Assembly: GCF_947568905.1 (NCBI RefSeq)
Contig: NC_079168.1
Coordinates: 78,616,001 to 78,680,000, forward strand
Direction of reading: 5' to 3'
DNA from: Ostrea edulis
Lineage: Eukaryota
Length of the DNA: 64,000 bases
Position numbers and translations under genes: made by a program. Shown here in pieces: positions 2,111 to 44,191 of the stretch (the first letter of the stretch is position 1; every line of letters starts with the position of its first letter). Below the pieces are notes generated by a model. The model did no database searches. It saw only the letters and a list, made by a program, of their open reading frames with translations, and was not told the DNA's origin.

Positions 2111-2237
2111 ATTGTATTTGCAAGAAAATCTTCGTTTCTCAGTGAATATTAAATATGGCCATGATTGTGTAGGAATGGTATTATGGAATGGCAACGCTGT
2201 ATCCACGACCCAGGATAAAGGTAGATGGTTTGGGAGA

Positions 2238-23504: not shown

Positions 23505-23771
23505 GTTCCCATGGGGATCCGGGTTAGAATAGGTTCTCAGTACTCCCTTGTTTGTCGTAAGAAGCGACAAAATGGGGCGGTCCTTCGGATGAGACCGCAA
23601 AAACCGAGATCCCGTGACACAGCAGGTGTGGCACGATAAAGATCCCTGCTCCAAGGCCATAAGGGCCGAGCATAGGCCTAAATCTTGCAGCCCTTCACCG
23701 GCCGTGGTGACGTCTCCATGTGAGTGATATATTCTCGAGAGGGATGTTAAACAATATTGAATTAATCAATC
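23505..23771 (+). mobile_element. SINE 3' half (abundant family in this window)
   Basis: GGATCCGGGTTAGAATAGG...GTCGTAAGAAGCGAC...GGTGACGTCTCCATGTGAGTGA...(AATC)n tail. Homologous to copies at 29.8, 36.0, 42.0 and 42.5 kb. Confidence 0.8.
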
Positions 23772-24017: not shown

Positions 24018-26719
24018 CCTTACACTAGCTGTAAACCGAACGCTTTTATAAGGAGGCGATCTGTAGCTCTACAGTCTATCCTAATTTTCCCCGGAGAGCT
24101 ACGGTTCTGCAGCTACTTAGGAGTGAGTGTTATGATGATGCATAACGATATATATATTATTATCTGTATGGATACATAGTATTGTCATTGTCTGAAAAGG
24201 GGGGGGGGGGGGGTGTTACTGGATTAAGAAGCATACCATATAACGTCGGGAATCATACCATCTGATAGAGGAAATGCTATCCATGATTAGGCTTAATTCA
24301 CAGTTGCGGCATTCTGACATCGTAACAAAATCCCTGATCATCAATTTTGATCTGCTGAATGTAATTGTTAATTAACCTTCTGGTGGATACTCTCTAGAGA
24401 TGATATAAATATGTACCGGTCATTCGAACCTTTACACCGCTGTTATGTAGGACGCTTATCCATCGAGGCCGTCTTTGAATAATGATTTATTTGATTATAT
24501 CAGTGTTATATCAAACACGTTTGTTATAATATTATGAGTACTTTACCCAAAAATGAAAGATTGGGAGGTGAATTTGTATGCTTAAATCACGATAATCGAT
24601 GTATAAATGGTTCTTTATATATACATATATAAAGCAGGGGAGGGAACTACCGTTGCGTCTTATAGTGAACAGTATAACTCACTGCCTATTGAGATGTATC
24701 TTGTGATATTACCGTGTAAGTTATCATTGTGTCTCATGTTATAATTTTTACAATAAAATTGTGTTCTGAAGGGAAAAGGAGTCAGTTCTGTCGAGTCAGT
24801 TTATTTATCTTGATAGCAGAATATTCATATCCAAGATTAGATAGATTACTTACTAGTTATGCCTTCGCGATCACAAATGCTAGTATATGATATTGATAAT
24901 ACATGAACAATTTATTGTAATTATTTATAAGCACATTTGTTTTAATATTATACACGGTAACTTCAGTAAATACACATATACATGTAAACTTTGTATATTC
25001 ACGAATATATAACACCAGAATTCGAAAATATGAGAGGGGGGGGTCGCACTACTATATACGTACTGAAAGGAAACGTCAATGGTCTCGATTACGGATACAT
25101 ATACAACAGCGAGCGAAGCGAACAGACAAAACTGAAGAATTGAAGACGGCGAACCCAAAAATATAAATGGGTATCTAGCACCAGTCAAGGTTAGATTATT
25201 TATTTTCTTGCAAGTGGAGGACAAATTATTATTTCCCCAAATTCGCTAAACACCTCTAATTATAAAATAATTGTCCCTTTAAAATATGTATTTTAATATT
25301 CAAATTTATAAATGTGATCTGGCAAGATCTGAGATTTTGTCATGCGAGGAAAAATAATTCGTTCATTTGATGCACTGCTAATACAATAATTTATGTTAAT
25401 CAGGGGCTATGGTTAATTAAGGGGCGAGTTCTTGAACGCAGCCCTGTTCTTTGCACGCCATCTAGCGTCAATTCTGTTAATGACTGTAGTTGTGCATGAT
25501 CATTTTGCAACGGAGTCAATTGATTTTGCAATATTAAAGTGCGTGCGTTTTAAAATTTTATATTAACGCCTTTTTTACCCTTTCCACGGCTCATATATTT
25601 GCCCAGTACCAGGGTATGTTACATTTTCTTACGGAATATTCTTGTGACGGTCAACTTGATTTAAACTTAATTCTAAAATTTGTAAAAGACCTAATTATTC
25701 ATTGCTTATTTTCCAATTAATTGCATACGTATCATTTTGTTTTTGTCAAAGTTTAAAAACGAAAACGATGGGATGGGAGTGTTTGATTAAGTGTTTGTAT
25801 CGATCGATTTTTTCTGTCCAATATTGCAAAATACCAATATTTCCCAATCTATCATGTCCATTGACCTATAATTCAAACAGAGCGTGCAAGTGAACAATGC
25901 ATCGAAGAGACAAACGACTGCAAGACTTCAGCTTCCAGTAGCAACGGGCAAACAAGGCCGACATTGCATAGTTATAGCATAACCTACATGTACATGTACC
26001 CACGATTTGCAACATTCCGCTAATATTATCGAAATTCGATCTGACTGAGCATTTAAATTGTAGTTCTATCCGAGTGCATAGGTTATTGGGCGGTCTCGAC
26101 TTGTTGACATTCACAACGGAGTAGACCTTGGAAAAACTGGATTTCCGGTGATTAAGAGTAAGTTTGGCCCCTTGTTTAAATCCATTGTTTGTAAGCAATT
26201 GTTGCATTAATATCGGATTAGGGATTGTGACCTTATAGTTTTCGTTGACTTGTGCAGTTCGGCTGTCATCAAGTGGAACGTCAATGACCGAAACAAAGTG
26301 CGTTTAAAGGGTCATATATACCGATGATGATAGATTTGATGCTGAAATATCTTTTGTTTGTGTCAATGAAATATTGAAATTCAGATTTATACCATTAGAT
26401 GAAAAGAGCCTTCATCATGCTCCACTGTATACAGTATAAGTTTCATCGTAGACCTGCAGAAAGGAACAGAGTTTCCCAATGTTTATGTTGTTTACACAGA
26501 GTTTAGCAGTTTGTACACCCGCTATATAAGAATTGGGAAAAACCCCTATGTACATGTATGTAATCGCACTACATGTCAGAGGCTCACACAGAGCAGGAGA
26601 ATAGAATTACACCCGGGTCAAACAGTTTGATTATTTTCAACCTGAAGCACATGAAATATGGTTCACTTTTCTGCTTAGATTCATGAAGCATTACTTTATT
26701 TTCAGATTAAGACTCCAAT

Positions 26720-28145
26720 ATGGGATCTGGTGGAAGTAAAAAGCCCAAACCACCTGCACAACCCAAGATGGTGGCTGGAGTTCCCCCGCAGCCGCCTTAT
26801 CTGGGTCCTCCCTGCGAATACCGCATGGAAAACTTCTTGGTTCCGTACGTGGTACAGTCGGACTTCGGATTCATGCCCGTTCAAGGCATGCCATTAACCA
26901 CAATAGACTTGAATGTGTACAACATGGCCCTGGGGTCACTGTATGACCTTGGATATCGTCTGGTGTCATTCTCAGTCATTCCTGCCTCCCTCACAGTCAG
27001 TGGATTTGTCACGGCTAATGTCAAACAAACACACAAATACCAAGGAATTTGTCGGAAATTACCAGAAGACGAACAACCTCAGCAATGGTCTCTAAAGGTC
27101 GTCAAGTCGTTTTTGCCCTCTAAAGTATTTACGTATGGATTGTTCCGATTAGGAGATGCTAAAATCACAGCCGATTCTAACCACATTTTCCAGACGATTT
27201 TGCAGGAGGCGGCAAACGGTGCTCGACTTGTATGCATAGAAATAACAGGTTTTAACTCCCAAAATGTGCAAGCACCTATGGCGACAAGCGCAGCGGCAGG
27301 AGCCTTTGGTGGCGCAGGTGCCATGAACATGTGCTTCTTTGGGCAAAGTCCAAACATGAGTAATTCTTTTTTATCTTCTTCAACAACCCGTTTCTTTAAT
27401 TCATTTTTCGTTCATGTGTATAATTAGTGAATACATGTACATGCCTACTATTGGAGTGTGCAATAGATTTATTCAATCAAGTTTGATCGTTACCTGTTTT
27501 GTCTTAAATGTATTATTTTATTTTACAGTTTTAGGAGTGGACATCTTCCTGGAGATTCCACGAAACCCAACTTCTGCCCGTTATGTTTACCAGTGTGTTA
27601 CAATTCCTATGAAAATCACATGGACGATGGCGATGGCTATGGGCGGGAAATGGATTGTAGAGATGGACTGGGTAGGAGTGACGTCACAATACCTTGGGAG
27701 TGGATGGAGAATGGTTGACTTGTTCATGGACCAAAACAACAGTGCTTTCCGTGATAATGCATTCTTCACTTCAAAAATAACAATCAACCAGAACTGTATA
27801 TTCTTTTTTGAAAAGGAGGAGTCCAAGATGAATGATAACACTCCCATCTATGAAGCAACAATGGTCCAATATAACTCCCCGGGGAAAATGACAGGCGGGA
27901 TTGGTACCACCACAGCAACATTTAACACGGCTTGGGAACCCGTGGTGAATCAGCTAGGAACCTTTGGATGGGAGCTAGTCAAAATCCTAGACACGCCAGC
28001 ATTGAACTTTGACGGTATGGCCGGGTTCGGTTCGCTTTCATTCAAAAAGGTCATGTGGATGTTTTATCAGAGAAAAATCGTTACAGCTGCTGCGCCACCT
28101 GCTGGCGAAAAGCCTCCACCTGCTGCAGCAACCCCGCAACAGTGA
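26720..28145 (+). CDS. Raftlin-like / four-module DUF4177-like protein, paralogue A (418 aa)
   Basis: Coding exons 26720-27359 and 27529-28145 (169-bp phase-1 GT-AG intron). Starts MGSGGSK (myristoylation motif). Four modules with G[YAW][RE][LM]V cores (LYDLGYRLV, EAANGARLV, YLGSGWRMV, LGTFGWELV) and a Pro/Ala tail. Family assignment is by recalled similarity to raftlin (LYQQGF.., QEAASQG..) and the DUF4177 GWELV motif. The CDS is firm; the name is less so. Confidence 0.88.
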
Positions 28146-29821
28146 AAGTAGTACTGCAATTTCTGATGTACATGTATGCGTGGCTCTGTGATATATTCAT
28201 TTAATTTGTAATAGTTTTATTGAAACTGTTCTCGCTGGAATGGTCTACTGTTCATTTAATTGTAACTGACTTTCACATTCTGTTTCTTTTGATGAACCTT
28301 CGAAGTGTACAGTAAATACTGGGAAGACTTTGTATTTTTGCCTTTTAAAGTTTCCTCGGCACGCCATTTTACCCCAACATTGGAACCTTCGGGCCAGTCC
28401 GGGGTCAATGAATAACTACTTACACGTAATTCAACTACTACTTAATTCAATGTGGCCGGAAAAAGAAAATATTTTGATAACGTTTAAAATGAATCTACAT
28501 GAATGTATGCATTTATGAAATGGTTGTTCGCGGGATAAAGGAATTATATAAAGGGACATGATTCGTCCACGTGACTGCATGTTGTCAGGGACTCGCACTG
28601 ATTGTATGGTCCAGTCAATACCTAGGTCCATGGTGTAGTACACACCTGGAGGTGTATAGTCATAAAATGTCAGACATTGATAGAAGCTGCACTAGTTTGC
28701 ACTTTTATATGAGGGAAACCGAAGGCTTCCATTGAAATAAAAGGAAATATGTTCAATAGCCGTTGGGCCGGTGTTGAAAACGAGGGATTCGAGATTCCAT
28801 TCTATTTGTGATGCCAATTTAAAGAACAAATGATCAACTAGTCCTGATGGGATACCAGATTTACATAAATAATAAAATATAAAACTGTAATGAACACTCA
28901 CAATCGTCAGATTCTGCTAGTGAGGCATTTCTTTGGACTACATCCCAGTGATGTGAACGTTGTGTAGATTTTTTTTTATGATATACATGTATTCTATGCA
29001 TTTTGATACTAAACAAGTTAAAACAGAGCACTTATGTCGGTGTTAACTGTAATTAGAAATAAAAACAAAAACAAAAACCAATTGCAACCGCTCAATCTGA
29101 GGCCCGGTTTATTATTGAATTTCACTACATGTATATCAAAAAAGAAAACAAACAAAAATCTTTTTCCCATGAAAAAAATTTGACCCCCAAAAGATCACGA
29201 CATATCCGAATATGAATTACACAACAAGAGGATGCCTCGACACCAATATGACTAACATGACCTTGGAAAGGTCTTAATTGACAAAAGAAATCTACATATA
29301 ATGGACATATGAAAGCTGTACTGTAAATGGTTCAGGAAATATTGAATAAGTCAGGTTTTCTAAAAGTAAGTCAAACTTCACGATCACAAGGTCAAACACC
29401 ACGGCATCACAGAAACTTGTAATTTTGTCTGTAATAATAATAGTAGGGGTTTATCACCTCCTACAAGAATGAAACTAATTTTTATTTAGAACTTTGATTC
29501 AAGGTAGTGATTGCAAAGCATCACGTGGTTTATTCATGTAGTTATTTTCGTTTCTGATTCTGGAATACATCAAGCGTTTGGGCATCAGTAATGACACATG
29601 ATTTAAACAAAGACTTGTCAGATGTGACCAGGGTAAAGTGAAAATATGTTTAGAAATATACCGGTACAAGCAAACATAAAATACAAATAAAAACTCCCTT
29701 ATATTTTTATCATCTTTTCAATAATAGTCATAGTCTCCATGTAACCCCTCCCCTGTTAATTTTCAGTCTTACAAATTCTTAAACCACCAGGCCTATTAAA
29801 ATCATAATATATAGTGTTATG

Positions 29822-29856
29822 ATTGATTGATTGATTGTATCTTGCTTAACGTCTCT

Positions 29857-29891
<35 letters not shown>

Positions 29892-30205
29892 AGACCGGTG
29901 AAAGGCTTTCAAATTTAGGCCTTTGCTCAGCACTTATGGCCATTGAGCAGTGAGGGTTCTTTAGCGTGCCACGCCTCCTATAGTCTAGGTCACCTACACG
30001 TTTGTCAATGCAGTATTCTACGGCTTGCGTGACCTAGGCTACACCTCCTACGACACGGGGCATCCGTTTTTAAGTTCATCTCCGAGGACCCGTGACATTC
30101 ACACCTGATGCCGAGCGTTTGGCGATGGAACTGTCACTCCCTGTTTTAACGACTTAGATCTGTCGCGGCCCGGATTCGAACCCCGGCCTCCCGCTTGCAG
30201 GGTAT
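29822..30205 (-). mobile_element. SINE copy carrying a nested 61-bp insertion
   Basis: (GATT)n tail, conserved body, and B-box-like GGGTTCGAATCC on the minus strand near 30175-30185. Confidence 0.8.
29981..30041. mobile_element. 61-bp mini-MITE with TAG termini and 9-bp TSD
   Basis: TAGTCTAGGTCAC...GTGACCTAGGCTA (13-bp TIR, 1 mismatch) flanked by CGCCTCCTA / CACCTCCTA. Absent from the other SINE copies. Confidence 0.7.
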
Positions 30206-30814
30206 ATAGTGTTATTAATTTCATAACATGCATACATTATTAGTGCACATAATCTAAAATGCTGGGTAAGTAGGCATAATAACCAAGGGAAGCCGTAGGC
30301 GAGGAAACATGGGCTACGTAAACGCGTCACTTTGAGCAAAAAAAATAAATAAAAAATGAATAATTCTTAGCACTTGCTGTTAATATCTTTTTCTCAATAA
30401 GTTCAGTTAATTCTTATGCTATGAAAAATAACAAAGGTTTGTTGTTGTTTCAAGATAATAGCTTGTAAAAATCACAAGGAATACGACGTCACAATGCACA
30501 GTTTATATCGGCGGTCTTATAGTTTTTTGCGACCACTTTTCGGCTCATTCCCTTGTTTGTCCTGGTGGCCATGAACAACTTTATTTCCGGTGATTATATA
30601 GACTTTCATTAACATTCATCGAGTAAAATTATATGAACCTTTCCTTGTGTTATCACATCTATGTTTGATATAACTACATCACAGTATTTAAAGAGATAAT
30701 ATGTTTTTTTCAATATTTGACTTTCAAATCTGCATGTCTAAAAGGGATACCTACTCCTGAGGACTTTATTTGAACAAACTTATATAAACTCTATTTCAGG
30801 GAGCTTTTCTTTTC

Positions 30815-31200
30815 ATGTTTTGTCTGTTGTCTGTCCTTCCGTCCGTCCGTCCGTCTGTTAACATTTTCATCTTCTCTTAAACCACTGAACCATTTTCAGC
30901 CAAACATGGTGCAACTCATCCTTGTGTAAAAAGGATTCAAGTTTGTTTAAATAAAGTTTCAACGGAGAGAAAAAAAAAAAAAAAAAAAAAGGGAGGCAAA
31001 AAATAGGATGAGGTGAATTAAAAAGTATATCACTAGGCCAGAAAAGTTGAAATTTACATGGCAGCTTCCTGATATAAAGTAGATTCAAATTTGTTCAAAT
31101 CATGGGGTTAGAGTGGAACCACAATAGGGGATCAACGTTTTACATGAAGATATACAAGAAAAATCACTTAAAATATTCTTCTCAAGAACCACTTTGCGAG
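30815..31200 (+). mobile_element. HINE fragment ((GTCC)n plus satellite unit)
   Basis: CTGTCCTTCCGTCCGTCCGTCCGTCTG followed by TTTCATCTTCTCTTAAACCACTG... and one satellite unit. Confidence 0.65.
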
Positions 31201-31224
31201 AAAATATGAAATTGGATATTTTAT

Positions 31225-32045
31225 TGAACATAGATGTCAACGGCAAATTAAAAACACAACTTCATGACAAACTAGATAACTTGAGCTTCTTCATCGTCAA
31301 CTTCCCATATTTGTGTGGCATAACCTGCATAAAAAGTGAAGATAACGAACAGCAATCAATTTCATGGATCCCATAAAGAATACAAAATTAGGAGAAGGGC
31401 AAACACGGGCCCTTGGACACACTAGTAGGTGCATTAGAGGAGTAAGTATCCCCTGTTGACCGGTCATGCCCACCATGAACCTTTCACATCAAAGCAAATT
31501 ATTGACAAATAAGTTGATATTAGAGGGTCGAATGCTGTCTGACGTGTTTCATACCAATTTGTTAAGCCGTTCTTTGCATACTGATTTTGACTACGGATTA
31601 TTCCATCTACCTAATCAAGATATAGGGCCCATGGCGGGTGTAACTGAACAAGAGGGGATGCTAACTTCTCCTAGGCACCTGATCCCACCTCCGGTGTGTC
31701 CAGGGGTCCGTGTTTGCCCTTCTCTTAATTTTGTATTCTTTATGGAATTTGATTGATGATTATCTTTAACCGTGTATTGATCAAAGATTCTTTATCTTAC
31801 TAGACCACAAAACCTCTATCGAGCATCCTGGTTTAGTTACTTCCGGTTTCTCATTTCATTTTCATCTGTGACATGCAACAACCGAACACCCTGTATGCTC
31901 TCTCAGTTAGACCAAAATTATAGGCACCTTATCTCACCTCTGGTGTGTCCAGGGATCCGTGTTTGCTCAACTCTCTATTTTGTATTGCTTATAGGAGTTA
32001 TCAGATTGATCACTGTTCGTTATTTCCACCTTTCATACTTAATCA
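31225..32045 (+). mobile_element. Cluster of Penelope-like 3' fragments
   Basis: LNIDVNGKLKTQLHDKLDNLSFFIVNFPYLC (RT-end pattern) plus two copies of the 3' block CTCCTAGGCACCTGATCCCACCTCTGGTGTGTCCAGGGGTCCGTGTTTGC. Confidence 0.7.
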
Positions 32046-32092
32046 TTCTATACGCAAAAGCATCTATGTATAAAGCGTCCATGTGTACCGAC

Positions 32093-32410
32093 CGGTCGCG
32101 GTAGCTCAATGGTAGAGCGTTCGCTTCGTAACCCGGAGGTCATGAGTTCGCGAGCCTCGATTGTGCCATGACCGCTTTAAACCTAAGACGTTAATATGGG
32201 TAGTGATTGCTCCTTCGCCGAACGCTCGGAATTATTAAAAGTGAGAATCACGGGTCTTTCGGATATGACCTTAACAACGGAGGTCTCGTATCGAGGTGCG
32301 TTAAAGAACCCTCACTGCTTCGACCTGATCGCTAAGCATAGGTCTAAATGTGTGGTTACAACTGGTGACGTTTTAATGTGAGTGAAAAATTCTCAACGGG
32401 AGGTAAAAAA
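32093..32410 (+). mobile_element. Near full-length tRNA-derived SINE
   Basis: Head GGTAGCTCAATGGTAGAGCGTTCGC...GAGTTCG (A/B boxes), body, and an A-rich tail. Confidence 0.75.
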
Positions 32411-32529
32411 ACAAAACAAATAAAAATGTATGTGTTAGTAGGTATAGATTTTCCATATTTGCTAATTGTAACCCATTCTAGATTTTCCCATCTTGTAGAG
32501 AAATCAACAGCTGTAGGAAAAACGCCACA

Positions 32530-33855
32530 ATATACATAGTGTTTACAGCCGTAGCAGTCACAACATACATATTATTTACAGCTGCAGCAGTCACCACATA
32601 CAGTGTTTACAGCTGTAGCAGTCACAACATACATAGTGTTTACAGTTGTAGCAGTCACCACATACATAGTGTTTACAGCTGTAGCAGTCACAACATACAG
32701 TGTTTACAGTTGTAGCAGTCACAACATACATAGTGTTTACAGCTGTAGCAGTCACCACATACAGTGTTTACAGCTGTAGCAGTCACAACATACATATTAT
32801 TTACAGCTGCAGCAGTCACCACATACAGTGTTTACAGCTGTAGCAGTCGCAACATACATTGTTTACAGCTGTAGCAGTCACAACATACATATTATTTACA
32901 GCTGTAGCAGTCACAACATACATAGTGTTTACAGCTGTAACAGTCACATCATACAGTGTTTACAACTGTAGCAGTCACAACATACATAGTGTTTACAGCT
33001 GTAGCAGTCACAACATACATAGTGTTTACAGCTGTAGCAGTCACAACATACATAGTGTTTACAGCTGTAGCAGTCACAACATACATAGAGTTTACAGCTG
33101 TAGCAGTCACAATATACATTGTTTACAGTTGTAGCAGTCACAACATACATAGTGTTTACAGTTGTAGCAGTCACGACATACATAGTGTTTACAGTTGTAG
33201 AAGTCACGACATACATAGTGTTTACAGTTGTAGCAGTCACAACATACATAGTTTTTACAGTTGTAGCAGTCACAACATACATTGTTTACAGTTGTAGCAG
33301 TCACAACATACATAGTGTTTACAGTTGTAGCAGTCACGACATACATAGTGTTTACAGTTGTAGAAGTCACGACATACATAGTGTTTACAGTTGTAGCAGT
33401 CACAACATACATAGTTTTTACAGTTGTAGCAGTCACAACATACATTGTTTACAGTTGTAGCAGTCACAACATACATAGTGTTTACAGTTGTAGAAGTCAC
33501 AACATACATAGTGTTTACAGTTGTAGAAGTCACGACATACATAGTGTTTACAGTTGTAGAAGTCACGACATACATAGTGTTTACAGCTGTAGCAGTCACA
33601 ACATACATTGTGTTTACAGTTGTAGCAGTCACAACATACATTGTTTACAGTTGTAGCAGTCACAACATACATAGAGTTTACAGCTGTAGCAGTCACAACA
33701 TACATTGTTTACAGTTGTAGCAGTCACAACATACAGTGTTTACAGCCTTAGAAGTCACAACATACATAGTGTTTACAGTTGTAGAAGTCACGACATACAT
33801 AGTGTTTACAGCTGTAGAAGTCACGACATACATAGTGTTTACAGCTGTAGCAGTC
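32530..33855. repeat. 29-33-bp minisatellite, about 40 units
   Basis: Unit ACATACATAGTGTTTACAG(C/T)TGTAG(C/A)AGTCAC(A/G). It generates the overlapping spurious ORFs on both strands. Confidence 0.97.
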
Positions 33856-35212
33856 AGGTTATTTTTTAACTTGTCAACGGATTATTCCTGCAGTGACACG
33901 GGGCTTCCATCTTTAAAATCATATCTGAAAGACTTGTTACTCTTACTTTTAAGTGTAATACCGGATTCGTGGCGAGAGAAAATTCACTATTTATGTTAAT
34001 TAAACGTGTTTGGTTTGCCGCTGCCTGAGACCCGGGTCTCCTGTTAGAGCTCTAACCAGAAGACTACCGCAAACGGTAAATTGTAACTCTAATTAATACG
34101 GTATATTATGTATGTTTTTCATTGAATGATAACTTTCGATTCGTAACTGTATTTATACTGGATTGTATTAATTATATCAGTTTTGTAAAGGGGAAATAAA
34201 GAATAAATTAAATGCCCAATTTAGGGACTCGGCCAATTGAACAATGAACGACATGTCATGCCATATGCAATAGACAAACGGCTGTAAGATTTTAAATGTG
34301 GTATCCAGTGACAACTAAAAAACAAGACATAATTCCCTACAAGGGTAGGACATAGAAATCCAGTGGACTTCCGGTGATTCAAAGTAAGTGTTGTCCCTTG
34401 CCTATATTAAATTGCTTGTAATCATTTGTTGGACAAACATCGGGTTAGGGATTGTGGTCTAGTTCGGCTGTCATCACGACGGCAACAAATTCATTTAAAG
34501 GGTCGCTCATTTCATAGACTTGAATTACGACCTGTTTCTGTTGACATATTCTTGTTTGTGATGCAAGATTTCTACAAGATGATGAAATTTAGAGTGAAGA
34601 CATTTGTTGAAACATCTGGTATCCTTCTCCATTGAACAAATGGGTTAATCGACGCCATATTTCTACTACTTTCTTCGATGACCTGCGGAAAGGAACAACG
34701 TTTCAAATGGCTTATGTAGTTTGTATTGTCCAGCTATTATCAAATAGCGGGAAATGGCTGAAAATGTACATGTCAGAGGCTCACACTAAACGAAGATAAC
34801 GTGAATTCATGATGCCTGAGTCGAACCATGTTTCATTAATTAACGATAAGGGATCAGCACAGACGTGCGTAAAGCACTTGAAGATTTTCCAATCGTTAAC
34901 ACAGATTTACATCCTCACCCAAAGTCCCACAAAAGTTTGAAATACCAACACTGATATTTCATACCTGTTTCTGTGTAACAAAGACGGTGCTTTACACCAC
35001 AGTAGATTTCACTTTTCAGTTTGTTGTGTTTATTAAGAAACATTCATAATTTACGAAACTTGTGGTAAGAAAGTAGCAGATGATTTCACAGCTCTAACAA
35101 TAACGAGATTCACGAAGAATCAATTATTTTCAACCTGAAGCACATGAAATATCGTTCATTTTCCTGCATTGGTTTTTGAAGCTTTACTTTATTTTCAGAT
35201 TGAGATTCTAGT

Positions 35213-38200
35213 ATGGGATGTAGTGGAAGTCAAATCTCCGATCCCAAGATGGTGGCTGAAGTTCCCCCGCAGCCGCCCTACCTGGGTCCTCCCTGCGAAT
35301 ACCGCATGGAAAACTTCTTGGTTCCGTACGTGGTACAGTCGGACTTCGGATTCATGCCCGTTCAGGGCATGTCATTAACCACATTAGACGTGAATGTGTA
35401 CAACATGGCCTTGGGGTCACTGTATGACCTTGGATATCGTCTGGTGTCATTCTCAGTTGTTCCCTCTTCGTATACAGCCGATAGTCATGTCAAGGGTGAT
35501 GTCAAACAAACACACAAGTACCAAGGAATCTGTCGGAAATTACCGGAAGACGAACAACCCCAGCAATGGTCTCTAAAGGTCGTCAAGTCGTTTTTGCCCT
35601 CTAAAGTATTTACGTATGGATTGTTCCGATTAGGATCTGAGTCGCAAACCATTGCCGATTCCAACCACATTTTCCAGACGATTTCGCAGGAGGCGGCAAA
35701 CGGTGCTCGACTTGTGTGCATAGAAATAACAGGTTTTAACTCCCAAAATGTGAAAGCATCAACGACAGCAAAAGCAACGGCAGGATTCTCTGGCAGCACA
35801 GGTTCCACGAACATGTGCTTCTTTGGGCAAAGTCCAGAAACGAGTAAATCTTTATCTTACTTAATCAAATTGCATAAAAAAGCATGTGAATTGTCGCCAT
35901 AGCGTAGTAAATATGAGTTCGCTTGGCAACCAGTTGGTTATCGATCTCGGCCTGCGTCAAATCTATGATTGATTTATCACATATTGTTTAACGTCCCGCT
36001 CTAGAATCTTTCACTCATATGGAGTCATCACCATTGCCGGTGAAGGGCTGTAAAATTTAGGCCCAAGCTCGACGCTTACGGCCTTTGAGCAAGGAGGGAT
36101 CTTTATCGTGCCACACCTACTGTGACACGGGGCCTCAGTTAATTTTTGCGGTCTCATCCGAAGGACCGCCCCATTAAATCGCCTCTTATGACAAGCAAGG
36201 GGTTTGTAACCCGAATCTCCACGGTAAGAAATGTCTAAGATATTTGACGTAGGTAGTGACTGCGGGTAGCCCGCAGCATTAGAAGTGAAAGTCATGGGTC
36301 TTTTGAATATGACCTTGAAAAACAGAAGCCCCATGTCGCCTTATGTGTTGGCACGATAAAGGACCCCTACCTGATACGGTCGTAAGCACCACTTTGTGAT
36401 GCTTTATCTAAATCTGGTGTCACCACTGTCGGTGCGGGTTCGAATTCTGCTCGCGCCGGTAAGTGAGAAAGTTTTACCAGTTTACTTTCGGAAGGTCGGT
36501 GGTCTCTTCCCAGGTACTTTGTATCTGGGTTCTCTCTTCCACCAATAAAAACTGGGCGCCACCAGATAAATGAAAAATTGTTGAATGTGGCTGAAAAATC
36601 TAAGGCAACTGGTGACTTTTTGTACGTGTCTGTCTTCAGGCTATTATGGTACAGCGATGTCTGTACGTTCGTCCGTTCGGGGTTTTCTGTATCTAATTTC
36701 ATTTCTGTCACATATCAAGCTAAAACTTATGTAGCTTAGGATCATGTTGAAAATTTGATCCATTTCGTCCTCTCTTGCAGGAATTTTGCCCCTTTATTTG
36801 AAAATACATGTAATTGTTATATGGAAGGTACATTTAATTTGTCCGGCGAACTCCTCCCACAATTTTCAAGTGAGGGTCATCTTGTTTTACAGAAGGTTTG
36901 TATGGGTATTGAAGATGTACATGTGGCAGGGATTTTGATTTTCTTCAATTTTAAAAAAAAATTACAGGTTATTGAACTTAGTCCGTTTTAAGGTAATATT
37001 ACATAGAGAGTACATGATATGTATGGTGAAGTCCTCCCACAGTCTTCAAGTGAGAACCTTCTTATTTTACAGTGTTTATATGGGTATTGTAGGTATGCAC
37101 TTGACAAGGATTTTGATTATTGAAAAAATTACAGGTTGTTGAACTTAGTCAGTTTTGAGGAATTACTACATAGAGAGTACATGATTTGTCTGTTTTTCCT
37201 TCTACCGTTTTCAAGTGAGGAGGAGAACTCGTAAGTTATTTGAACTTGTTTCTGATCCTTTTGTATATCATATATGTACAATGAAATATGTTCAAAACAA
37301 GTGAGGACCTTCTTATTTTACAGAGTGTTTATATGGGTATAGAAGATATGCATGTGGAGAAAATTACAGGTTGTTGAACTTAGACAGTTTTGAGGAATTA
37401 CTACATAGAGAGTACATGATTTGTCTGTTTTTCCGTTCACAGTTTTCAAGTGAGGACCAGAATATTTGTGTGGGTATGGAAGGATTTTGATCCCCCCCCC
37501 CCCCCCATTTATTGAGAAAATTACGGGTTGTTGAACGTAGTCTGTTTTAAGGAAATATTTCATAAAGAGTACATGATTTGTCTTTTATTTTTCCTTCCGA
37601 AGTTTTCAAGTTAGGACCTTCTTATTTTACAGAGTATAAATGGGTATGGAAGATTTGCGTGTGGCAAGGATTTTGATTTTCCTCGATTTTTGAGAAAATT
37701 ATAGCTAGGTCGTTGGACTCGGTCCGTTTGGAGGAAACATTATATTGAGTAAAGGTCATAGTTTGTCCTCACTCCTCTCACCGGTTAGAAGCGAGGACCT
37801 TTGTAAATAACTTAAAGATGTGAATAGTGCAAGGATTTTAATTTTCAACAATTTTTAATTTTCTTTGATGCTTTGAATATCTACAAGTTGTTGAACTTGG
37901 TCAAATTTGGGGAAATATCTTACACACAGAACTCTCGGTTTGTCCATCTACCACTTGTCACAAAAAGTGCAAAGAAAGTATGTCACGGCTGATACTACCT
38001 GAAGAAAGGTTCTACGAATTATGGCTTAAGAAAACACCCTATGTAAGCATTTTCACGGGCGTATTATGTACCGTTTGCAGTGCTCTTGTTACCTATAGAG
38101 GATGACAAGTAAACACTTTTCAAAAGGAATATAAAACAATACCCCCTCCCCCCCAAAAAACCAACCAAAAACCCACAACATAGGATCTTAGATCAAGTCT

Positions 38201-38867
38201 CATCGTTATTTTTTTTGTTTTAAAAATATGTTTTTATCATTATTATCTTACAGTTTTAGGAGTGGACATCTTCCTGGAGATCCCACGAAACCCAACTTCT
38301 GCCCGTTATGTTTACCAGTGTGTTACAATTCCTATGAAAATCACATGGACGACGGCGATGGACAGGAAATGGAACACAGAGATGGACTGGGTAGGAGTGA
38401 CGTCACAATACCTTGGGAGTGGATGGAGAATGGTGGAAGTGTTTATGGACCAAAACAACAGTGCTTTCCATGACAGTGACCTCTTCACTACAAATATGAC
38501 AATCAACCAGAACTGTATATTCTTTTTTGAAAAGGAGCAGTCGAAAATGAACGACAACACTCCCATTTATGAAGCGACGATGGTCCAATATCACTCTTTG
38601 GTAAAAATGAAAAGTAAAATTGATACAACCATTACAACCATAACAACATTTGACACAGCTTGGGAACCCGTTGTGACTCAGCTAGGAACCTTTGGGTGGG
38701 AGCTAGTCAAAATCTTAGACACGCCAGTAATGAACTTTGAAAGCGTCATCGGGAGGGGTTTTATTACATTCAAAAAGGTCATGTGGATGTTTTTTCAGAG
38801 GAAAATTGTTACAGTTTCTGTGCCACTTGCTGGCGTAAATCCTCCACCTGTTGCAGCGACACCTTAA
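35213..38867 (+). CDS. Raftlin-like / four-module DUF4177-like protein, paralogue B (414 aa)
   Basis: Coding exons 35213-35843 and 38254-38867 (2410-bp phase-1 intron at the same position as in paralogue A). Starts MGCSGSQ. The reading frame is intact across both exons. Confidence 0.88.
35970..36600 (-). mobile_element. Two adjacent SINE-type insertions in the paralogue B intron
   Basis: 35970-36360 matches the common SINE body. 36390-36600 is a second tRNA-headed repeat (GCGGGTTCGAATTC B-box-like at about 36435-36450). Confidence 0.7.
36640..37900 (+). mobile_element. HINE/CvA-like element with about 135-bp internal tandem units
   Basis: CTATTATGGTACAGCGATGTCTGTACG start shared with 16660. 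Repeated TTTTCAAGTGAG...GTATGGGTAT...GTTGTTGAACTTAG...ATAGAGAGTACATG units. Confidence 0.75.
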
Positions 38868-39856: not shown

Positions 39857-40329
39857 TTTTGTGTGCATGTGGCTCTGTGATCAATTTAACTCATTCGTAA
39901 GAGTTTTACTGAAAGTGTTCTCGTTCGAATGTTCTTACGCAACTGACTTTAATTTTCTGTTTTCTTGATGAACATTTGAATTGTGAATAAAAGAGAAACA
40001 GTTAAAGAAAATGCGTTTGGTAACTTTTAAAATAAATATGTCCTCTTTAGAAAATGTACATGAATGTATGCATGTATGAAATGGCTGTTTGCAAGATAAA
40101 GACATCATGTAAAGGGACAAGATTCGTCCATGTGACTACATGTTGTCAGGGACTCGCACTGTATCGTCTTGTCAATACCTAGGTCCCTGGTGTAGTATAC
40201 ACCCGGAGGTGTATAGTCGCTGCAAAGGTCAGACATTAATAGATACTGCTCTAGTTCGCACATTTTACGAGGGAAATTGAAGGCATCCATTGAAGCTAGA
40301 GCTTGTTCTGCTTATGGTCAGTTTTTAAA

Positions 40330-40740
40330 TGGAAACAGGCTACTGACAAACAAGTTGATGGTGTAGGGGTTCCAACAGTCTCGTTTAAAGTCATCATTTC
40401 GCAAATTCTATGGTCGTTATAACGATCTGCATTGCCATTACAACCTACCATTGGGTCAAATGTTGTCTGACGTGTTTCATACCGATTGTTAGGCCATATT
40501 TGGTACACTGATTTTGACTACGGATAACTCCGTTTACCTGATCAGGATATAGGGCTCACGGCGGGTGTGACTGGTCGACAGGGAATGCTTACTCCTCCTA
40601 GGCACCCGATCCCACCTATGGTATGTCCAGGGGTCCGTGTTTGCCCAACTTTCTATTTTGTATTGCTTACAGGAGTTTTGAGATTGATCACTGTTCGTTA
40701 TCTTCACTTTTCATTGATCATTATCTTCACCTTTCATTAA
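40330..40740 (+). mobile_element. Penelope-like 3' fragment
   Basis: AGGCTACTGACAAACAAGTTGATG...CTCCTAGGCACCCGATCCCACC...GAGATTGATCACTGTTCGTTATCTTCAC, homologous to the 31.5 and 39.6 kb copies. Confidence 0.75.
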
Positions 40741-41534
40741 AAACGTGGGCTTCGATATTCAAGTGATCAACGAGGACTGTGGAGGAATACCAAATTTACA
40801 TAGAAAGAAATATAACTAATTAACACTAACAATCGTCGGATTCTGATAATAAGATACTTCTTTGGACTGCAACATCATCAGGTAATCAAAGCGATTCGAA
40901 GTCAGGTGAACAGCGAAACTTGTTTAATCCGACATGCTCTGGGAGATAGATTTAGTGGGGTGTTTTTTTTTTTTCATTGAACAGTGTATCGAACATGAAA
41001 ATAGATAATTGGGAAGGAAAAGATAAACAACCATAGAAAAATAAGAGGTATATGGGCCAAAATGCTCACCTGAATCACACCGCCACTGCTGTTCATCAGA
41101 TTTTTAACCCCTTTTATTTCCACGATTTTTTTGGGCCTGACTTTTAATCCACAAAACATAGGGATTGTGTTCTGGAGAATATTTTTTAAATGACTTTTTG
41201 TCCATATTCATGTACTAAGTAACATATGATCCCCTATTCTAGTCCCATCCTTAGACGTTGGGTCCATATTTTGAAAAACAAAACTCCCAAGTCCACACAA
41301 CTTGGAAATGTTTGCAAGTCAATATATGATATACTGTGGTTTTGCGACTTTTAAAAAGAAAAGTTTAAAATTTCCTATAAATGTACGCGGGCATTTTCTC
41401 ATGTAAAACTTTGAATGCATATTTTAGCCCTATCCTTACCTCAGCGGCCATGATTTGATAAATTATGAATCTGCATTACATTGGAATGCTTGCATGTTGA
41501 TACACATTATCATGGCCAGTGGTTCTTGAGAATA

Positions 41535-41999: not shown

Positions 42000-42715
42000 C
42001 GATTGATTGCCGTCCCTCTCGAAAATCTTTCACTCACAAAGAGGTGTCACCACTGCTGGTGATGGGCTGCAAGATTTAGCCCTATGATCAGCGCTTACAG
42101 CCTTTGGGCAGGGAGAGATCTTTAACGGGGCCTCGTTTTTTGCGGTCTCATCCGAAGGACCGCCCCATCTAGTCGCCTCTTACGACAAGAATGGGGTACT
42201 GAAGACCTATTCTAACCCGGATCTTGGTAACAAATATCAAGAGAGTGTGACACATGAGTTGTAGGATATAACACATATTCCCTGAGGTAAAGCGAACATC
42301 GGTGATCACAATAGGCCTAAATATCACAAATGTCTCCCCGTCACAAAACCTGAAATGACGAGTGAATCTGTAGATGACGGCATCGAAAAACCAAATTCCC
42401 CGTTGAGGTCTCATCGTATAGAAATCCATCTCAGAGATCGATATTGTACTTTTTTGATTGATTGATTTAACGTCCCTCTCGACAATATTTCACTTATATG
42501 GAGACGTCACCGCTGTTCGTGAAGGGCTGCAAAATTTAGGGATATGATCGGTGATTATGGCCATTGAGCAGGGAAAGATCTTTATCATATGCTACACCTG
42601 CTGTGACCCGGGGCCTCGGTTTTTGCCGTCTCATCCGAAGGACCACCCCATTTAATCGCCTCTTACGACAAGAAAGGGGGTATTATGAGGACTTATTCTA
42701 ACCCGGATCTCCACG
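42000..42715 (-). mobile_element. Two SINE 3'-half copies (42000-42225 and 42455-42715)
   Basis: Both show GATTGATT tails, CACTCA(C/T)A..GAGACGTCACC and GGTCTCATCCGAAGGACC...TCTAACCCGGATCT. Confidence 0.8.
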
Positions 42716-42973: not shown

Positions 42974-44191
42974 TCATCGACCAGTTTGGCTGTCTGGGTG
43001 AATGGACTCGGATTTGTGTCTGCAAATCAAACGTTTTACTTCATGTCGAAATTTGGCATCAAAGAATCCATAGATAAAGGGGTTAACCACATGATTAACA
43101 ATATACAGTCTGTACAAAAACAGCAGTCCTATGATAACCGAGTCGGGTTTTCTCCAAAACGATTGCACAAAAACAGACTCGAGCAGCATGATAACTATTC
43201 GAGGCAAGTATGCGATCACAAACACCATTGTGATCGTCATGAACATGTACGAGTATCTGTAGTGTCGAAAGTGGTACTTCATAGCCGGAAAGTTTGCTTT
43301 TAATAAAATATCTTGAGATTTTCTTTTGGTGCAAGTTGTTTCATCTTCTGGGCGAGGTCTTTGATTGTCACTGCTTTCATGATCATGCAGGTTACTAGGA
43401 TTTTCTTCGAATTCTCCCCTTTCTACACTGTGAGGATCAGATGTCTCAACACTTCTGGTTTTTCGTTTTATATCAGAAATGGTGGAGACTGAAAGTTCAG
43501 GTCGAGGAATGGTTTTCATTCCTCTTAACGACTTTCGGTACACCATGACCTTACTGTAGATAGTTTTCCCAATGAAGATGTAACAAATCGTGATGACGAT
43601 TATACCAGACACAGCAAAGACGAACAGAAACACGTTGTATCCCAACAGTGCCCCCGCCTTGCCACTGTGACCACATCGGTACCCCACCAACGTAATATTG
43701 TCCGAACTGTAACTTTCATTTACCACGCGAATTTCCCCATACAAGAATAGTGTAGGAATTGACAGTATTGTGGCAACGGTGACTGTTCCCCAAATTACCA
43801 TTCTCTTTATCTTTAAAGACCACTTCTTGAAGAACGGACGACACACCTTCAGGTATCGTTGGAAAGCAATGACCATAAGCAAAGTTCCCCCAGACATGGT
43901 TGAAGCCTGGCTGAAGAACCACAAAATGCGACAGAGGGAATTCCCTGGAAATCTCACAGGCAGAAGATTCAGGGCCAACGCATATGAGGATCCAATGATA
44001 CACGAACAAGCGTCTACAGCCGCCAGAGAGGGGATGAAGTAACGATCGTCGCTCTTCTTAGACATCCGAAAGACATAGATCAAGATAACCAAGCCATTTC
44101 CAAAGACTCCAAGAATCAAATAAAGGCACAACACTATGTTATTTCCGACCAGGTAATCAGACAGTTCGGAATTCCACGTCTCAAGATTCAT
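42974..44191 (-). CDS. Intronless class A (rhodopsin-like) GPCR, peptide-receptor-like, 405 aa
   Basis: Seven hydrophobic segments: TM1 GVFGNGLV, TM2 LAAVD, TM3 Cys plus IAFQRY, TM4 W...P, ECL2 Cys, long ICL3, TM6 AYLP, TM7 NPFIY. The ligand cannot be assigned. Confidence 0.95.
   Translation of the reverse strand: MNLETWNSELSDYLVGNNIVLCLYLILGVFGNGLVILIYVFRMSKKSDDRYFIPSLAAVDACSCIIGSSYALALNLLPVRFPGNSLCRILWFFSQASTMSGGTLLMVIAFQRYLKVCRPFFKKWSLKIKRMVIWGTVTVATILSIPTLFLYGEIRVVNESYSSDNITLVGYRCGHSGKAGALLGYNVFLFVFAVSGIIVITICYIFIGKTIYSKVMVYRKSLRGMKTIPRPELSVSTISDIKRKTRSVETSDPHSVERGEFEENPSNLHDHESSDNQRPRPEDETTCTKRKSQDILLKANFPAMKYHFRHYRYSYMFMTITMVFVIAYLPRIVIMLLESVFVQSFWRKPDSVIIGLLFLYRLYIVNHVVNPFIYGFFDAKFRHEVKRLICRHKSESIHPDSQTGR

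What the first reader, a model, noticed from the sequence alone, without database searches (positions are those of the whole stretch)
26720..38867. Tandem raftlin/DUF4177-like gene pair: frozen scaffold, hypervariable loops
Seen: both proteins consist of four repeats of a strand-hairpin-helix-G[YAW][RE][LM]V-hairpin-strand module. Between paralogues the scaffold is almost identical (a run of about 45 identical residues, VKQTHKY...GLFRLG, and 1 change in PKMVA...VQGM). The loop segments are heavily replaced: IPASLTVSGFVTAN vs VPSSYTADSHVKGD (10 of 14 differ), QAPMATSAAAGAFGGAGAM vs KASTTAKATAGFSGSTGST, MAMAMGGKWIV vs TAMDRKWNT, NSPGKMTGGIGTTTAT vs HSLVKMKSKIDTTITTITT, ALNFDGMAGFGSLS vs VMNFESVIGRGFIT. 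Paralogue A loops are G/A/F/M-rich; paralogue B loops are more polar and charged. Known: vertebrate raftlin is a lipid-anchored raft protein involved in poly(I:C)/TLR3 and TLR4 endocytosis, and DUF4177 proteins are short single-module GWELV proteins. Inference: this is a membrane-anchored, pseudo-fourfold scaffold displaying up to eight variable hairpins, possibly a diversifying recognition or membrane-inserting family in bivalve immunity.
Basis: partly seen in the sequence, partly recalled or inferred. Interest (0 to 1): 0.78.

Follow-up and report, generated by a model that had tools for sequence, protein, structure and literature searches.

The report
Tandem oyster raftlin genes, one remodelled
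Two neighbouring oyster genes are this genome's only detected relatives of the membrane-raft protein raftlin: one keeps the ancestral sequence, while the younger copy has lost constraint on its hairpin tips, which is ordinary duplicate-gene divergence and not a hypervariable immune family.

Summary
Two 2-exon genes (A 26720-28145, B 35213-38867, + strand) encode proteins of about 415 aa that are 78% identical. Their differences are strongly clustered (permutation p<1e-4).

They belong to the raftlin family. Pfam Raftlin matches the C-terminal half, and the AF2 model matches chordate raftlin models at TM 0.60. Both start with an N-terminal MG...S acylation motif and contain four dodecin/DUF4177-like modules.

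The hypervariable-loop reading fails. The A-type loops are nearly unchanged in Saccostrea cucullata and two other oysters, although synonymous sites are saturated. Of 60 polarisable differences, 55 arose in B. B-type loops also occur in a second oyster contig.

A codon model shows a B-lineage shift at about 41% of codons, from omega 0.03 to about 1.4 (2dlnL about 120). This omega is not significantly above 1 (P=0.29).

The near-identical scaffold reflects purifying selection, probably helped by A/B gene conversion (relative-rate test 9 vs 36, p=7e-5, in the scaffold only).

Three searches find only these two copies in the genome. No RNA evidence was obtained for B.

Verdict: a conserved raftlin homologue plus a derived duplicate with relaxed or shifted constraint. 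It is a new member of a known kind and of modest interest.

The parts
26720..27359 (+). Gene A exon 1. Encodes the MGSGGSKK start and modules 1-2. The last base is the first base of a split Ile codon.
   Evidence: ORF and GT donor at 27360. The same exon structure is seen in the orthologue contig L005 and in the spliced cDNA contig L011.
27360..27528 (+). Gene A intron, 169 bp, phase 1.
   Evidence: GT at 27360 and AG at 27527-27528. The junction ..M-I-LGVD.. matches P0005 and P0007.
27529..28145 (+). Gene A exon 2, with modules 3-4 and the stop codon. This is the part that matches Pfam Raftlin.
   Evidence: PF15250, 31.5 bits against a cut-off of 29.4. Also found by a genome scan with the HMM.
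35213..35843 (+). Gene B exon 1, with an MGCSGS start.
   Evidence: ORF and GT donor at 35844. Identical to residues 1-210 of P0007.
35844..38253 (+). Gene B intron, 2410 bp, swollen by high-copy repeats.
   Evidence: Acceptor AG at 38252-38253. Word depths are about a thousand- to ten-thousand-fold higher (up to ~1.9 million) at 36003-38195 in DNA runs.
38254..38867 (+). Gene B exon 2, with the stop codon.
   Evidence: Identical to residues 212-414 of P0007. Pfam Raftlin scores 26 bits.
35462..35503 (+). B patch 2: tip of the module-1 hairpin (residues 84-97).
   Evidence: 10 of 14 residues differ from A. A's version is identical in Saccostrea cucullata.
35633..35656 (+). B patch 3: pre-helix loop of module 2 (residues 141-148).
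35753..35809 (+). B patch 4: disordered linker between the two halves (residues 181-199).
   Evidence: pLDDT below 50 at residues 179-206. Ala/Gly-rich in A-type genes and Ser/Thr/Lys-rich in B.
38349..38372 (+). B patch 5: pre-helix loop of module 3 (residues 243-250).
   Evidence: The B-type version is shared with contig L006.
38466..38498 (+). B patch 6: tip of the module-3 hairpin (residues 282-292).
38589..38648 (+). B patch 7: pre-helix hairpin of module 4 (residues 323-342), with a 3-residue insertion.
38727..38768 (+). B patch 8: tip of the module-4 hairpin (residues 369-382).
26138..26719 (+). 5' flank of A. Parts of it can still be aligned with the 5' flank of B (34364-35212).
   Evidence: blastn blocks of 77-100% identity.
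28146..28942 (+). 3' flank of A. Parts of it can be aligned with 39869-40871, downstream of B.
   Evidence: blastn blocks of 73-84% identity.

Best explanation
A and B are the only two raftlin-family genes detected in this oyster genome, which is Ostrea edulis or a very close relative. Each encodes a cytosolic protein of about 415 aa. Each has a predicted N-terminal myristoylation site (Met-Gly...Ser6). B also has Cys3 for palmitate, and A has a Lys-rich stretch instead. Each protein is built from four dodecin/DUF4177-like modules (strand, loop, helix, long hairpin). A is the ancestral-type gene and is kept almost unchanged across oyster genera, loops included. B is a younger tandem duplicate. 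In the B lineage about 40% of codons lost the strong purifying selection they have in A-type genes, moving from omega about 0.03 to about 1-1.4. These codons are concentrated in seven loops or hairpin tips, the inter-half linker and both tails. They exchanged Gly/Ala/Met/Phe for Ser/Thr/Asp/Glu/Lys. The rest of B stays nearly identical to A because of strong purifying selection, probably reinforced by gene conversion between the two copies. Shown here: the gene models, family membership, fold, direction of change, the shift in selective regime, and the conservation of the A loops. Inferred: that the proteins are acylated and membrane-bound as vertebrate raftlin is; that the Gly-plus-hydrophobic hairpin tips contact the membrane or a partner; that B has therefore lost or changed that contact; and that gene conversion occurred.
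For: Family. Pfam Raftlin is above its cut-off on A and on A-type orthologues. The AF2 model of B has pLDDT 81.7 and pTM 0.82, and its best match in the ESM Atlas is a chordate raftlin cluster (TM 0.60 over 307 residues). MG...S is the consensus start across 49 family members. Full-length relatives occur in Pecten, Mytilus, gastropods, Owenia, Ptychodera, Acanthaster and Holothuria. Modules. The DSSP pattern is; hhalign between modules gives E=7e-7 and 1e-5, with the remaining pairs in register; single modules resemble dodecin, with 64 of 67 residues aligned at Z 5.4. Direction of change. 55 changes are B-derived against 5 A-derived (binomial p=1e-11). A-type loops are conserved against orthologues whose dS is saturated. 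B-type loops are shared with contig L006: 32 quartet sites support B+L006, against 11 and 5 for the alternatives. Regime shift. In my own branch-site model the no-foreground lnL is -3909.4 and the B-clade lnL is -3849.3; 52 of the 66 sites with posterior above 0.9 lie in the patches. B is still constrained: B vs L006 gives scaffold dN/dS 0.055/0.42 and patches 0.18/0.43. Gene conversion. In the scaffold of exon 2, B is the odd one out at 9 sites and L006 at 36 (p=7e-5; synonymous sites only 5 vs 22, p=0.0015). In the patches the counts are 11 vs 16, not significant. dS(A,B) is 0.11-0.24 in the scaffold, against dS(A,L006) of 0.59. Copy number. Two loci by protein, Pfam HMM and profile searches of the whole genome.
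Against: No RNA evidence for B was obtained. The runs that cover B are DNA, and the two small runs that hold 44-45% of A's words hold nothing of B's exons. With the B-clade foreground omega is 1.36, so neutral relaxation and weak positive selection cannot be told apart. The gene-conversion case rests on one B-type outgroup contig of unknown species and on exon 2 only; the contrast between scaffold and patch asymmetry is itself of uncertain strength and was not formally tested. A partition by secondary structure alone does not separate fast from slow codons (omega 0.35-0.46 within the fold), so 'loops' here means specific hairpin tips that I defined partly from the A/B differences. I had no model coordinates, so whether the tips share one face is untested. 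Acylation and membrane binding are predicted, not shown.
Confidence: 0.55

Rival explanations
1. Adaptive neofunctionalisation. Soon after the duplication, positive selection re-coded the hairpin tips of B to a polar, charged surface and gave it a new partner or membrane specificity. Selection now keeps these tips distinct from A despite gene conversion.
For: Whole-gene dN/dS between A and B is 0.51, and about 92% of polarised replacements fall on B, so omega on the B branch is near 1 even though three quarters of the protein is frozen. In the post hoc patches dN is 0.41 and dS 0.34. The stem-only branch-site test gives 2dlnL=17.8, P=2e-5. The replacements are directional, toward Ser/Thr/Asp/Glu, with charged residues rising from 9 to 17. 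B-type tips persist in a second oyster at omega 0.42.
Against: The stem-only fit is degenerate (branch length 0, omega running to infinity) and fits worse than the B-clade null (-3853.5 vs -3849.3). With the whole B clade as foreground, omega is 1.36 and P=0.29. The patches were chosen from the differences themselves, which inflates dN. Gene conversion shortens the apparent silent distance and is known to produce false positives in such tests (established knowledge).
Confidence: 0.25
2. B is a redundant copy drifting toward a pseudogene. Its loops simply decay first, and it is little or not expressed.
For: About 41-47% of codons fit omega=1 in the B clade. There is no RNA support for B, while two small runs hold A but not B. 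The B intron is swollen by repeats.
Against: The reading frame and both splice sites are intact. A B-type exon 2 is intact in a second oyster at dS 0.43, with scaffold omega 0.13 and patch omega 0.42. NCBI predicts B as a protein-coding gene. The remainder of the protein is as conserved as in A.
Confidence: 0.12
3. One reading: a membrane-anchored scaffold that displays hypervariable hairpins, as a diversifying recognition family in bivalve immunity.
For: The differences do cluster at hairpin tips and loops of a repeated scaffold. The same columns are the most variable and gap-rich in the wider family (entropy 2.77 vs 2.12 bits, p=1e-6). A divergent Saccostrea echinata protein (P0008) changes or deletes some of the same loops.
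Against: Only two copies exist in the genome. A-type loops are conserved across genera. The changes are one-sided, in B only. Omega above 1 is not shown. There is no signal peptide, and a cytosolic acylated protein is not exposed to pathogens. No expression or immune data were found.
Confidence: 0.05

Closest known systems
Vertebrate raftlin / raftlin-2 (RFTN1, RFTN2; Pfam PF15250)
   Same: The Pfam Raftlin model matches the C-terminal half. The whole-length predicted fold matches chordate raftlin models at TM 0.60 over 307 residues. Both have the N-terminal Met-Gly(-Cys) start; vertebrate raftlins are membrane-targeted by acylation of the N-terminal Gly and Cys (bioRxiv 10.64898/2026.06.12.731942, read).
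   Different: The oyster proteins are about 415 aa, while the chordate model is 608 aa, so they lack the long insertions. The N-terminal half gives no Pfam hit by sequence. A has Ser instead of Cys at position 3, followed by a Lys-rich stretch. No function has been tested in any invertebrate. NCBI names most of the invertebrate proteins looked up 'uncharacterized' or 'hypothetical'; one Holothuria record is named Raftlin.
DUF4177 (Pfam PF13783), short bacterial single-module proteins
   Same: The GWEL(V) motif follows a helix. There are weak Pfam hits on module 4 (E 9e-4 to 7e-3). A bacterial cluster containing DUF4177 aligns structurally (TM 0.52 by the row, 145 residues).
   Different: The scores (17-20 bits) are below the cut-off of 25. 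Here four modules are fused in one chain, with long hairpin extensions.
Dodecin, ribosomal protein S6 and ACT-like beta-alpha-beta-beta units
   Same: Single modules superpose on them, for example tt0972 dodecin with 64 of 67 residues aligned, rmsd 2.5, Z 5.4.
   Different: A Z of about 5 is a common arrangement and not evidence of homology. No solved structure matches the four-module assembly (Foldseek E>0.01, best VIA Z 6.4).
Asymmetric divergence of tandem duplicates with partial concerted evolution
   Same: One copy is conserved and one derived. Silent-site similarity between the paralogues exceeds that between the presumed orthologues in the conserved segments only.
   Different: Conversion tracts could not be delimited, and only one outgroup contig for B was available.

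Membership tests
Raftlin (PF15250) | Match to the family HMM at or above the curated cut-off (29.4 bits) | tested here: met
   A exon 2 scores 31.5 bits, and the A-type orthologues P0005, P0006 and P0008 score 37.9, 39.3 and 32.8 bits. B alone scores 26-27 bits, just below the cut-off, but is 78% identical to A.
Raftlin (PF15250) | Homology over the whole length, N-terminal half included | tested here: inconclusive
   Neither exon 1 gives a Pfam hit at E<=1. The whole AF2 model, however, aligns to chordate raftlin models over residues 10-414 (TM 0.60), and a full-length profile finds 146 cluster representatives, many of them full-length invertebrate relatives, one named Raftlin.
Raftlin (PF15250) | N-terminal Gly2 (myristate) and Cys3 (palmitate) membrane anchor | tested here: met
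   By sequence only. B starts MGCSGS. A starts MGSGGSKK, with Gly2 and Ser6 but no Cys3, and basic residues instead. M1, G2 and S6 are invariant in the oyster set, and MGxxxS is the consensus of 49 relatives. The acylation itself was not tested.
Raftlin (PF15250) | Location in lipid rafts and a role in receptor signalling or endocytosis | not testable with these tools
   No invertebrate study was found.
DUF4177 (PF13783) | Match to the family HMM at or above the cut-off (25 bits) | tested here: not met
   16.9-19.9 bits, on module 4 only.
DUF4177 (PF13783) | Shared module fold | tested here: inconclusive
   An Atlas cluster in which 40% of members carry DUF4177 aligns at TM 0.52 by the row and 0.28 by the query. 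The modules are homologous to one another (hhalign E=7e-7 and 1e-5).
Diversifying (immune-type) recognition family | Many paralogues or copy-number variation | tested here: not met
   Two loci in 895 Mb by protein, Pfam HMM and profile searches. These counts are lower bounds by the tool's own note.
Diversifying (immune-type) recognition family | Variable segments differ between orthologues, and omega exceeds 1 | tested here: not met
   A-type patches are 77-82% identical across oysters with saturated dS, the same as the scaffold. B-clade omega is 1.36, P=0.29.
Diversifying (immune-type) recognition family | Exposure to non-self (secreted or on the cell surface) | tested here: not met
   Read directly from the sequence: the N-termini are polar and Pro/Lys-rich, with no hydrophobic leader and no transmembrane stretch. 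No predictor was run.
Concerted evolution by gene conversion | Paralogues are closer at silent sites than orthologues, in part of the gene | tested here: met
   In the scaffold of exon 2, dS(A,B) is 0.24, dS(B,L006) 0.42 and dS(A,L006) 0.59. The relative-rate test gives 9 vs 36 (p=7e-5) in the scaffold and 11 vs 16 in the patches.
Concerted evolution by gene conversion | Delimited conversion tracts, or mosaic alleles in the population | tested here: inconclusive
   Two A/B mosaic contigs exist (L009, L010). They carry no private differences and switch only inside identical stretches of 37 nt or more, as chimeric k=31 assemblies would.

The most novel reading that the evidence does not exclude
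B is a neofunctionalised raftlin. Seven hairpin tips, which by module topology probably lie on one face, were driven by positive selection from a Gly/Ala/hydrophobic surface that touches the membrane to a polar, charged one. Selection holds them distinct from A while gene conversion keeps homogenising the scaffold. That would make the pair a natural loop-swap experiment on what the conserved raftlin tips do.
Probability: 0.22. Interest if true: 0.5.

Novelty: new member of a known kind. Interest (0 to 1): 0.3.

Why it matters
Raftlin has been studied only in vertebrates, and its structure and working surface are unknown. This pair shows three things. The family is old and widespread in invertebrates. 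It is built from four related dodecin/DUF4177-like modules. The Gly-plus-hydrophobic hairpin tips are strongly conserved in the ancestral-type oyster gene. The derived copy B has changed exactly those tips on an otherwise identical scaffold, so it offers a ready-made comparison for testing what they do. For oyster biology it is an ordinary lineage-specific duplicate, and nothing here ties it to immunity.

Tried and rejected
1. Word search with the bare exon gave only fragments because of the tool's length window. The listed 243-aa ORF 27414-28142, with the scored region limited to the exon, reached the full-length proteins.

2. A metagenome scan for further Ostrea copies found nothing. I could therefore not obtain the A-type gene from the species that carries L006.

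3. The A/B mosaic ORFs P0010 and P0011 at first looked like gene-conversion alleles. Their contigs have no private differences and switch only within identical stretches of 37 nt or more. One of them joins B's 5' flank to A's intron. I rejected both as assembly chimeras. The 'other letters' in run X11 at 35365-35411 are A's own unitig laid on B.

4. hhalign of the N-half against the C-half with 8 sequences was not significant (E=0.52). Module-wise comparison with more than 40 sequences was.

5. A PDB sequence search and Foldseek against the PDB found no relative.

6. A partition by DSSP class does not capture the fast codons.

7. The stem-only branch-site result (P=2e-5) was set aside as degenerate.

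8. RNA check. No run is on record as RNA. X11 and X14 proved to be DNA, because their contigs cross exon/intron borders.

9. The L006 intron does not align with B's intron, so no shared-insertion evidence of orthology was found.

10. A look-up of the contig that encodes P0007 returned nothing.

11. Earlier scan notes contain nothing on raftlin.
Full report
OBSERVATION. Two open exon pairs lie on the + strand. Gene A has exon 1 at 26720-27359, a 169-bp GT..AG intron, and exon 2 at 27529-28145. Gene B has exon 1 at 35213-35843, a 2410-bp intron, and exon 2 at 38254-38867. Both introns are phase 1 and split an Ile codon. The B model is identical to database protein P0007, which NCBI names 'uncharacterized protein LOC125652799 [Ostrea edulis]'. 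The window is therefore from O. edulis or a very close relative. The exons are 79% and 76% identical at the protein level. The clustering of differences is far beyond chance: 52 adjacent difference pairs against 22 expected, and a longest identical run of 45 against 19 expected.

WHAT THE PROTEINS ARE. Pfam Raftlin matches the C-terminal half. It scores 31.5 bits on A against a cut-off of 29.4, 26-27 bits on B, and 33-39 bits on three oyster orthologues. DUF4177 gives only weak hits, below its cut-off, on the last module. A profile of the oyster proteins finds 146 cluster representatives. Many are full-length, at 350-440 aa. They come from scallop, mussel, gastropods, an annelid, a hemichordate and echinoderms. 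Nearly all are named 'uncharacterized', and one is named Raftlin.

An AF2 model of B built on 49 sequences is confident (pLDDT 81.7, pTM 0.82). Its best match among ESM Atlas models is a chordate raftlin cluster (TM 0.60 over 307 residues). A bacterial cluster containing DUF4177 comes further down the list. No solved structure matches the whole protein.

The model shows four modules. Each has a strand, a loop or short hairpin, a helix, and then a long hairpin that begins with the G[YAW][RE][LM]V motif. Module profiles match one another: m3-m4 E=7e-7, m1-m3 E=1e-5, and the other pairs are weak but in register. Single modules superpose on dodecin-like units at Z about 5.

All family members start MG...S. 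B has Cys3. A has Ser3 followed by Lys-Lys. Vertebrate raftlins are membrane-targeted by acylation of the N-terminal Gly and Cys (10.64898/2026.06.12.731942). The genome holds only these two loci by protein, Pfam HMM and profile searches.

ARE THE LOOPS HYPERVARIABLE? No. A-type genes were recovered from Saccostrea cucullata (P0006), from a spliced cDNA contig of another oyster (P0005/L011), and from a genomic contig (L005). Synonymous sites between A and these genes are saturated. Even so, the 'variable' patches are 77-82% identical, the same as the scaffold at 80-85%. Several loops are letter-for-letter the same in Saccostrea.

I polarised the A/B differences with three outgroups. This gives 55 changes in B, 5 in A and 25 ambiguous (p=1e-11). 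B mainly lost Ala and Gly and gained Ser, Thr, Asp and Glu. B-type loops recur in exon 2 of a metagenome contig, L006. Quartet site patterns support B+L006 at 32 sites, against 11 and 5 for the alternatives. The loops are therefore paralogue-specific signatures and not hypervariable segments. In the wider family the same columns are the more variable and gap-rich ones (entropy 2.77 vs 2.12 bits, p=1e-6), as loops usually are. Many still keep a Gly-plus-hydrophobic tip, which B has lost in several loops.

SELECTION. Nei-Gojobori estimates for A vs B give dN 0.113 and dS 0.22. In patches defined from the differences, dN is 0.41 and dS 0.34. In the scaffold, dN is 0.03 and dS 0.18. Classes taken from the model's secondary structure do not separate fast from slow codons (omega 0.35-0.46 in the folded part). 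The fast codons are specific hairpin tips together with their flanking strand ends.

I wrote a branch-site model A (F3x4, five taxa). Without a foreground branch the lnL is -3909.4. With the B clade as foreground and omega2=1 it is -3849.3. With omega2 free it is -3848.8, with omega2=1.36, 41% of sites in that class, and P=0.29. The background omega of those sites is 0.03. Of the 66 sites with posterior above 0.9, 52 lie in the patches. A stem-only foreground gives P=2e-5, but the branch length goes to zero and omega to infinity, and the fit is worse than the clade null, so I do not rely on it. B vs L006 still shows constraint: scaffold omega 0.13 and patch omega 0.42. The shift in selective regime in the B lineage is thus solid. 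Positive selection is possible but not shown.

WHY THE SCAFFOLD IS SO ALIKE. Purifying selection explains most of it (scaffold omega 0.18). Silent sites add a second signal. In exon 2, dS(A,B) in the scaffold is 0.24, against 0.42 for B-L006 and 0.59 for A-L006. With A as the reference, B is the odd one out at 9 scaffold sites and L006 at 36 (p=7e-5; synonymous sites only 5 vs 22). In the patches the counts are 11 vs 16. A generally faster L006 lineage would raise both classes. The pattern instead suggests A/B gene conversion confined to the similar segments. Flanking non-coding DNA can still be aligned in blocks, mostly 73-84% identical. Two Logan contigs that looked like A/B mosaics are best explained as k-mer assembly chimeras. 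This part of the argument rests on one outgroup contig of unknown species.

EXPRESSION. No listed run is on record as RNA. Runs X11 and X14 cover B but are DNA, because their contigs cross the exon/intron borders. Two very small runs (117 and 47 million letters, each a small fraction of one genome's length) hold 44-45% of A's words and nothing of B's exons. This suggests transcript-derived data in which A is present and B is not, but it is an inference. An A-type orthologue is certainly transcribed, since L011 is an intron-less contig with the full ORF.

HOW IT PROBABLY WORKS (inference). By analogy with raftlin, both proteins sit on the cytosolic leaflet through N-terminal acyl groups. Within each module the topology runs strand up, loop, helix down, strand up, tip, strand down. 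This places both changed elements at the same end of the module, so the tips may form one face. I could not check this, because the model coordinates are not exposed to scripts. The conserved Gly/hydrophobic tips of A-type proteins are candidates for contact with the membrane or a partner. B, with its polar and charged tips, would bind differently or not at all.

VERDICT. The sequence observation is confirmed. The raftlin/DUF4177-like assignment and the four-module build are supported. The idea of a hypervariable, diversifying immune family is not supported. This is a conserved invertebrate raftlin homologue plus a derived tandem duplicate. It is a new member of a known kind and of modest interest.

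Noticed in passing
window 32526-33856: A minisatellite between the two genes. The unit is 33 bp and there are about 41 copies at 90% match, with higher-order periods of 97 and 163 bp. It produces long spurious ORFs on both strands.
   Followed up: partly
window 35874-38195 (B intron): High-copy repeats fill most of B's intron, with word depths up to millions in DNA runs and many internal 'joints'. A's intron is only 169 bp.
   Followed up: partly
window 42974-44188 (-): An intron-less 404-aa ORF with a full rhodopsin-family 7TM domain (Pfam 7tm_1, E=1e-26), 4 kb downstream of B.
   Followed up: partly
window 2112-2858 (+): An ORF with a zinc carboxypeptidase M14 domain (E=1e-23), probably an exon of a larger gene.
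   Followed up: no
L009 and L010 (Logan contigs ERR13868514, ERR13868501): These contigs switch between A-type and B-type sequence only inside stretches shared by both genes (37 nt or more) and have no private differences. They look like chimeric assemblies of close paralogues, and are a caution for anyone using such contigs as alleles.
   Followed up: yes
P0008 (Saccostrea echinata, 410 aa): A divergent oyster raftlin-like protein that alters some of the same loops and deletes the last hairpin tip outright. I did not determine whether it is a second paralogue or a fast orthologue.
   Followed up: no
window 23512-23771, 29824-29979, 35966-36201, 42002-42713: A dispersed repeat of about 250 bp occurs in both orientations around and inside the gene pair (72-83% identity).
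   Followed up: no
window 53418-54479 (+): A 354-aa ORF with only low-complexity, repeat-type Pfam hits.
   Followed up: no
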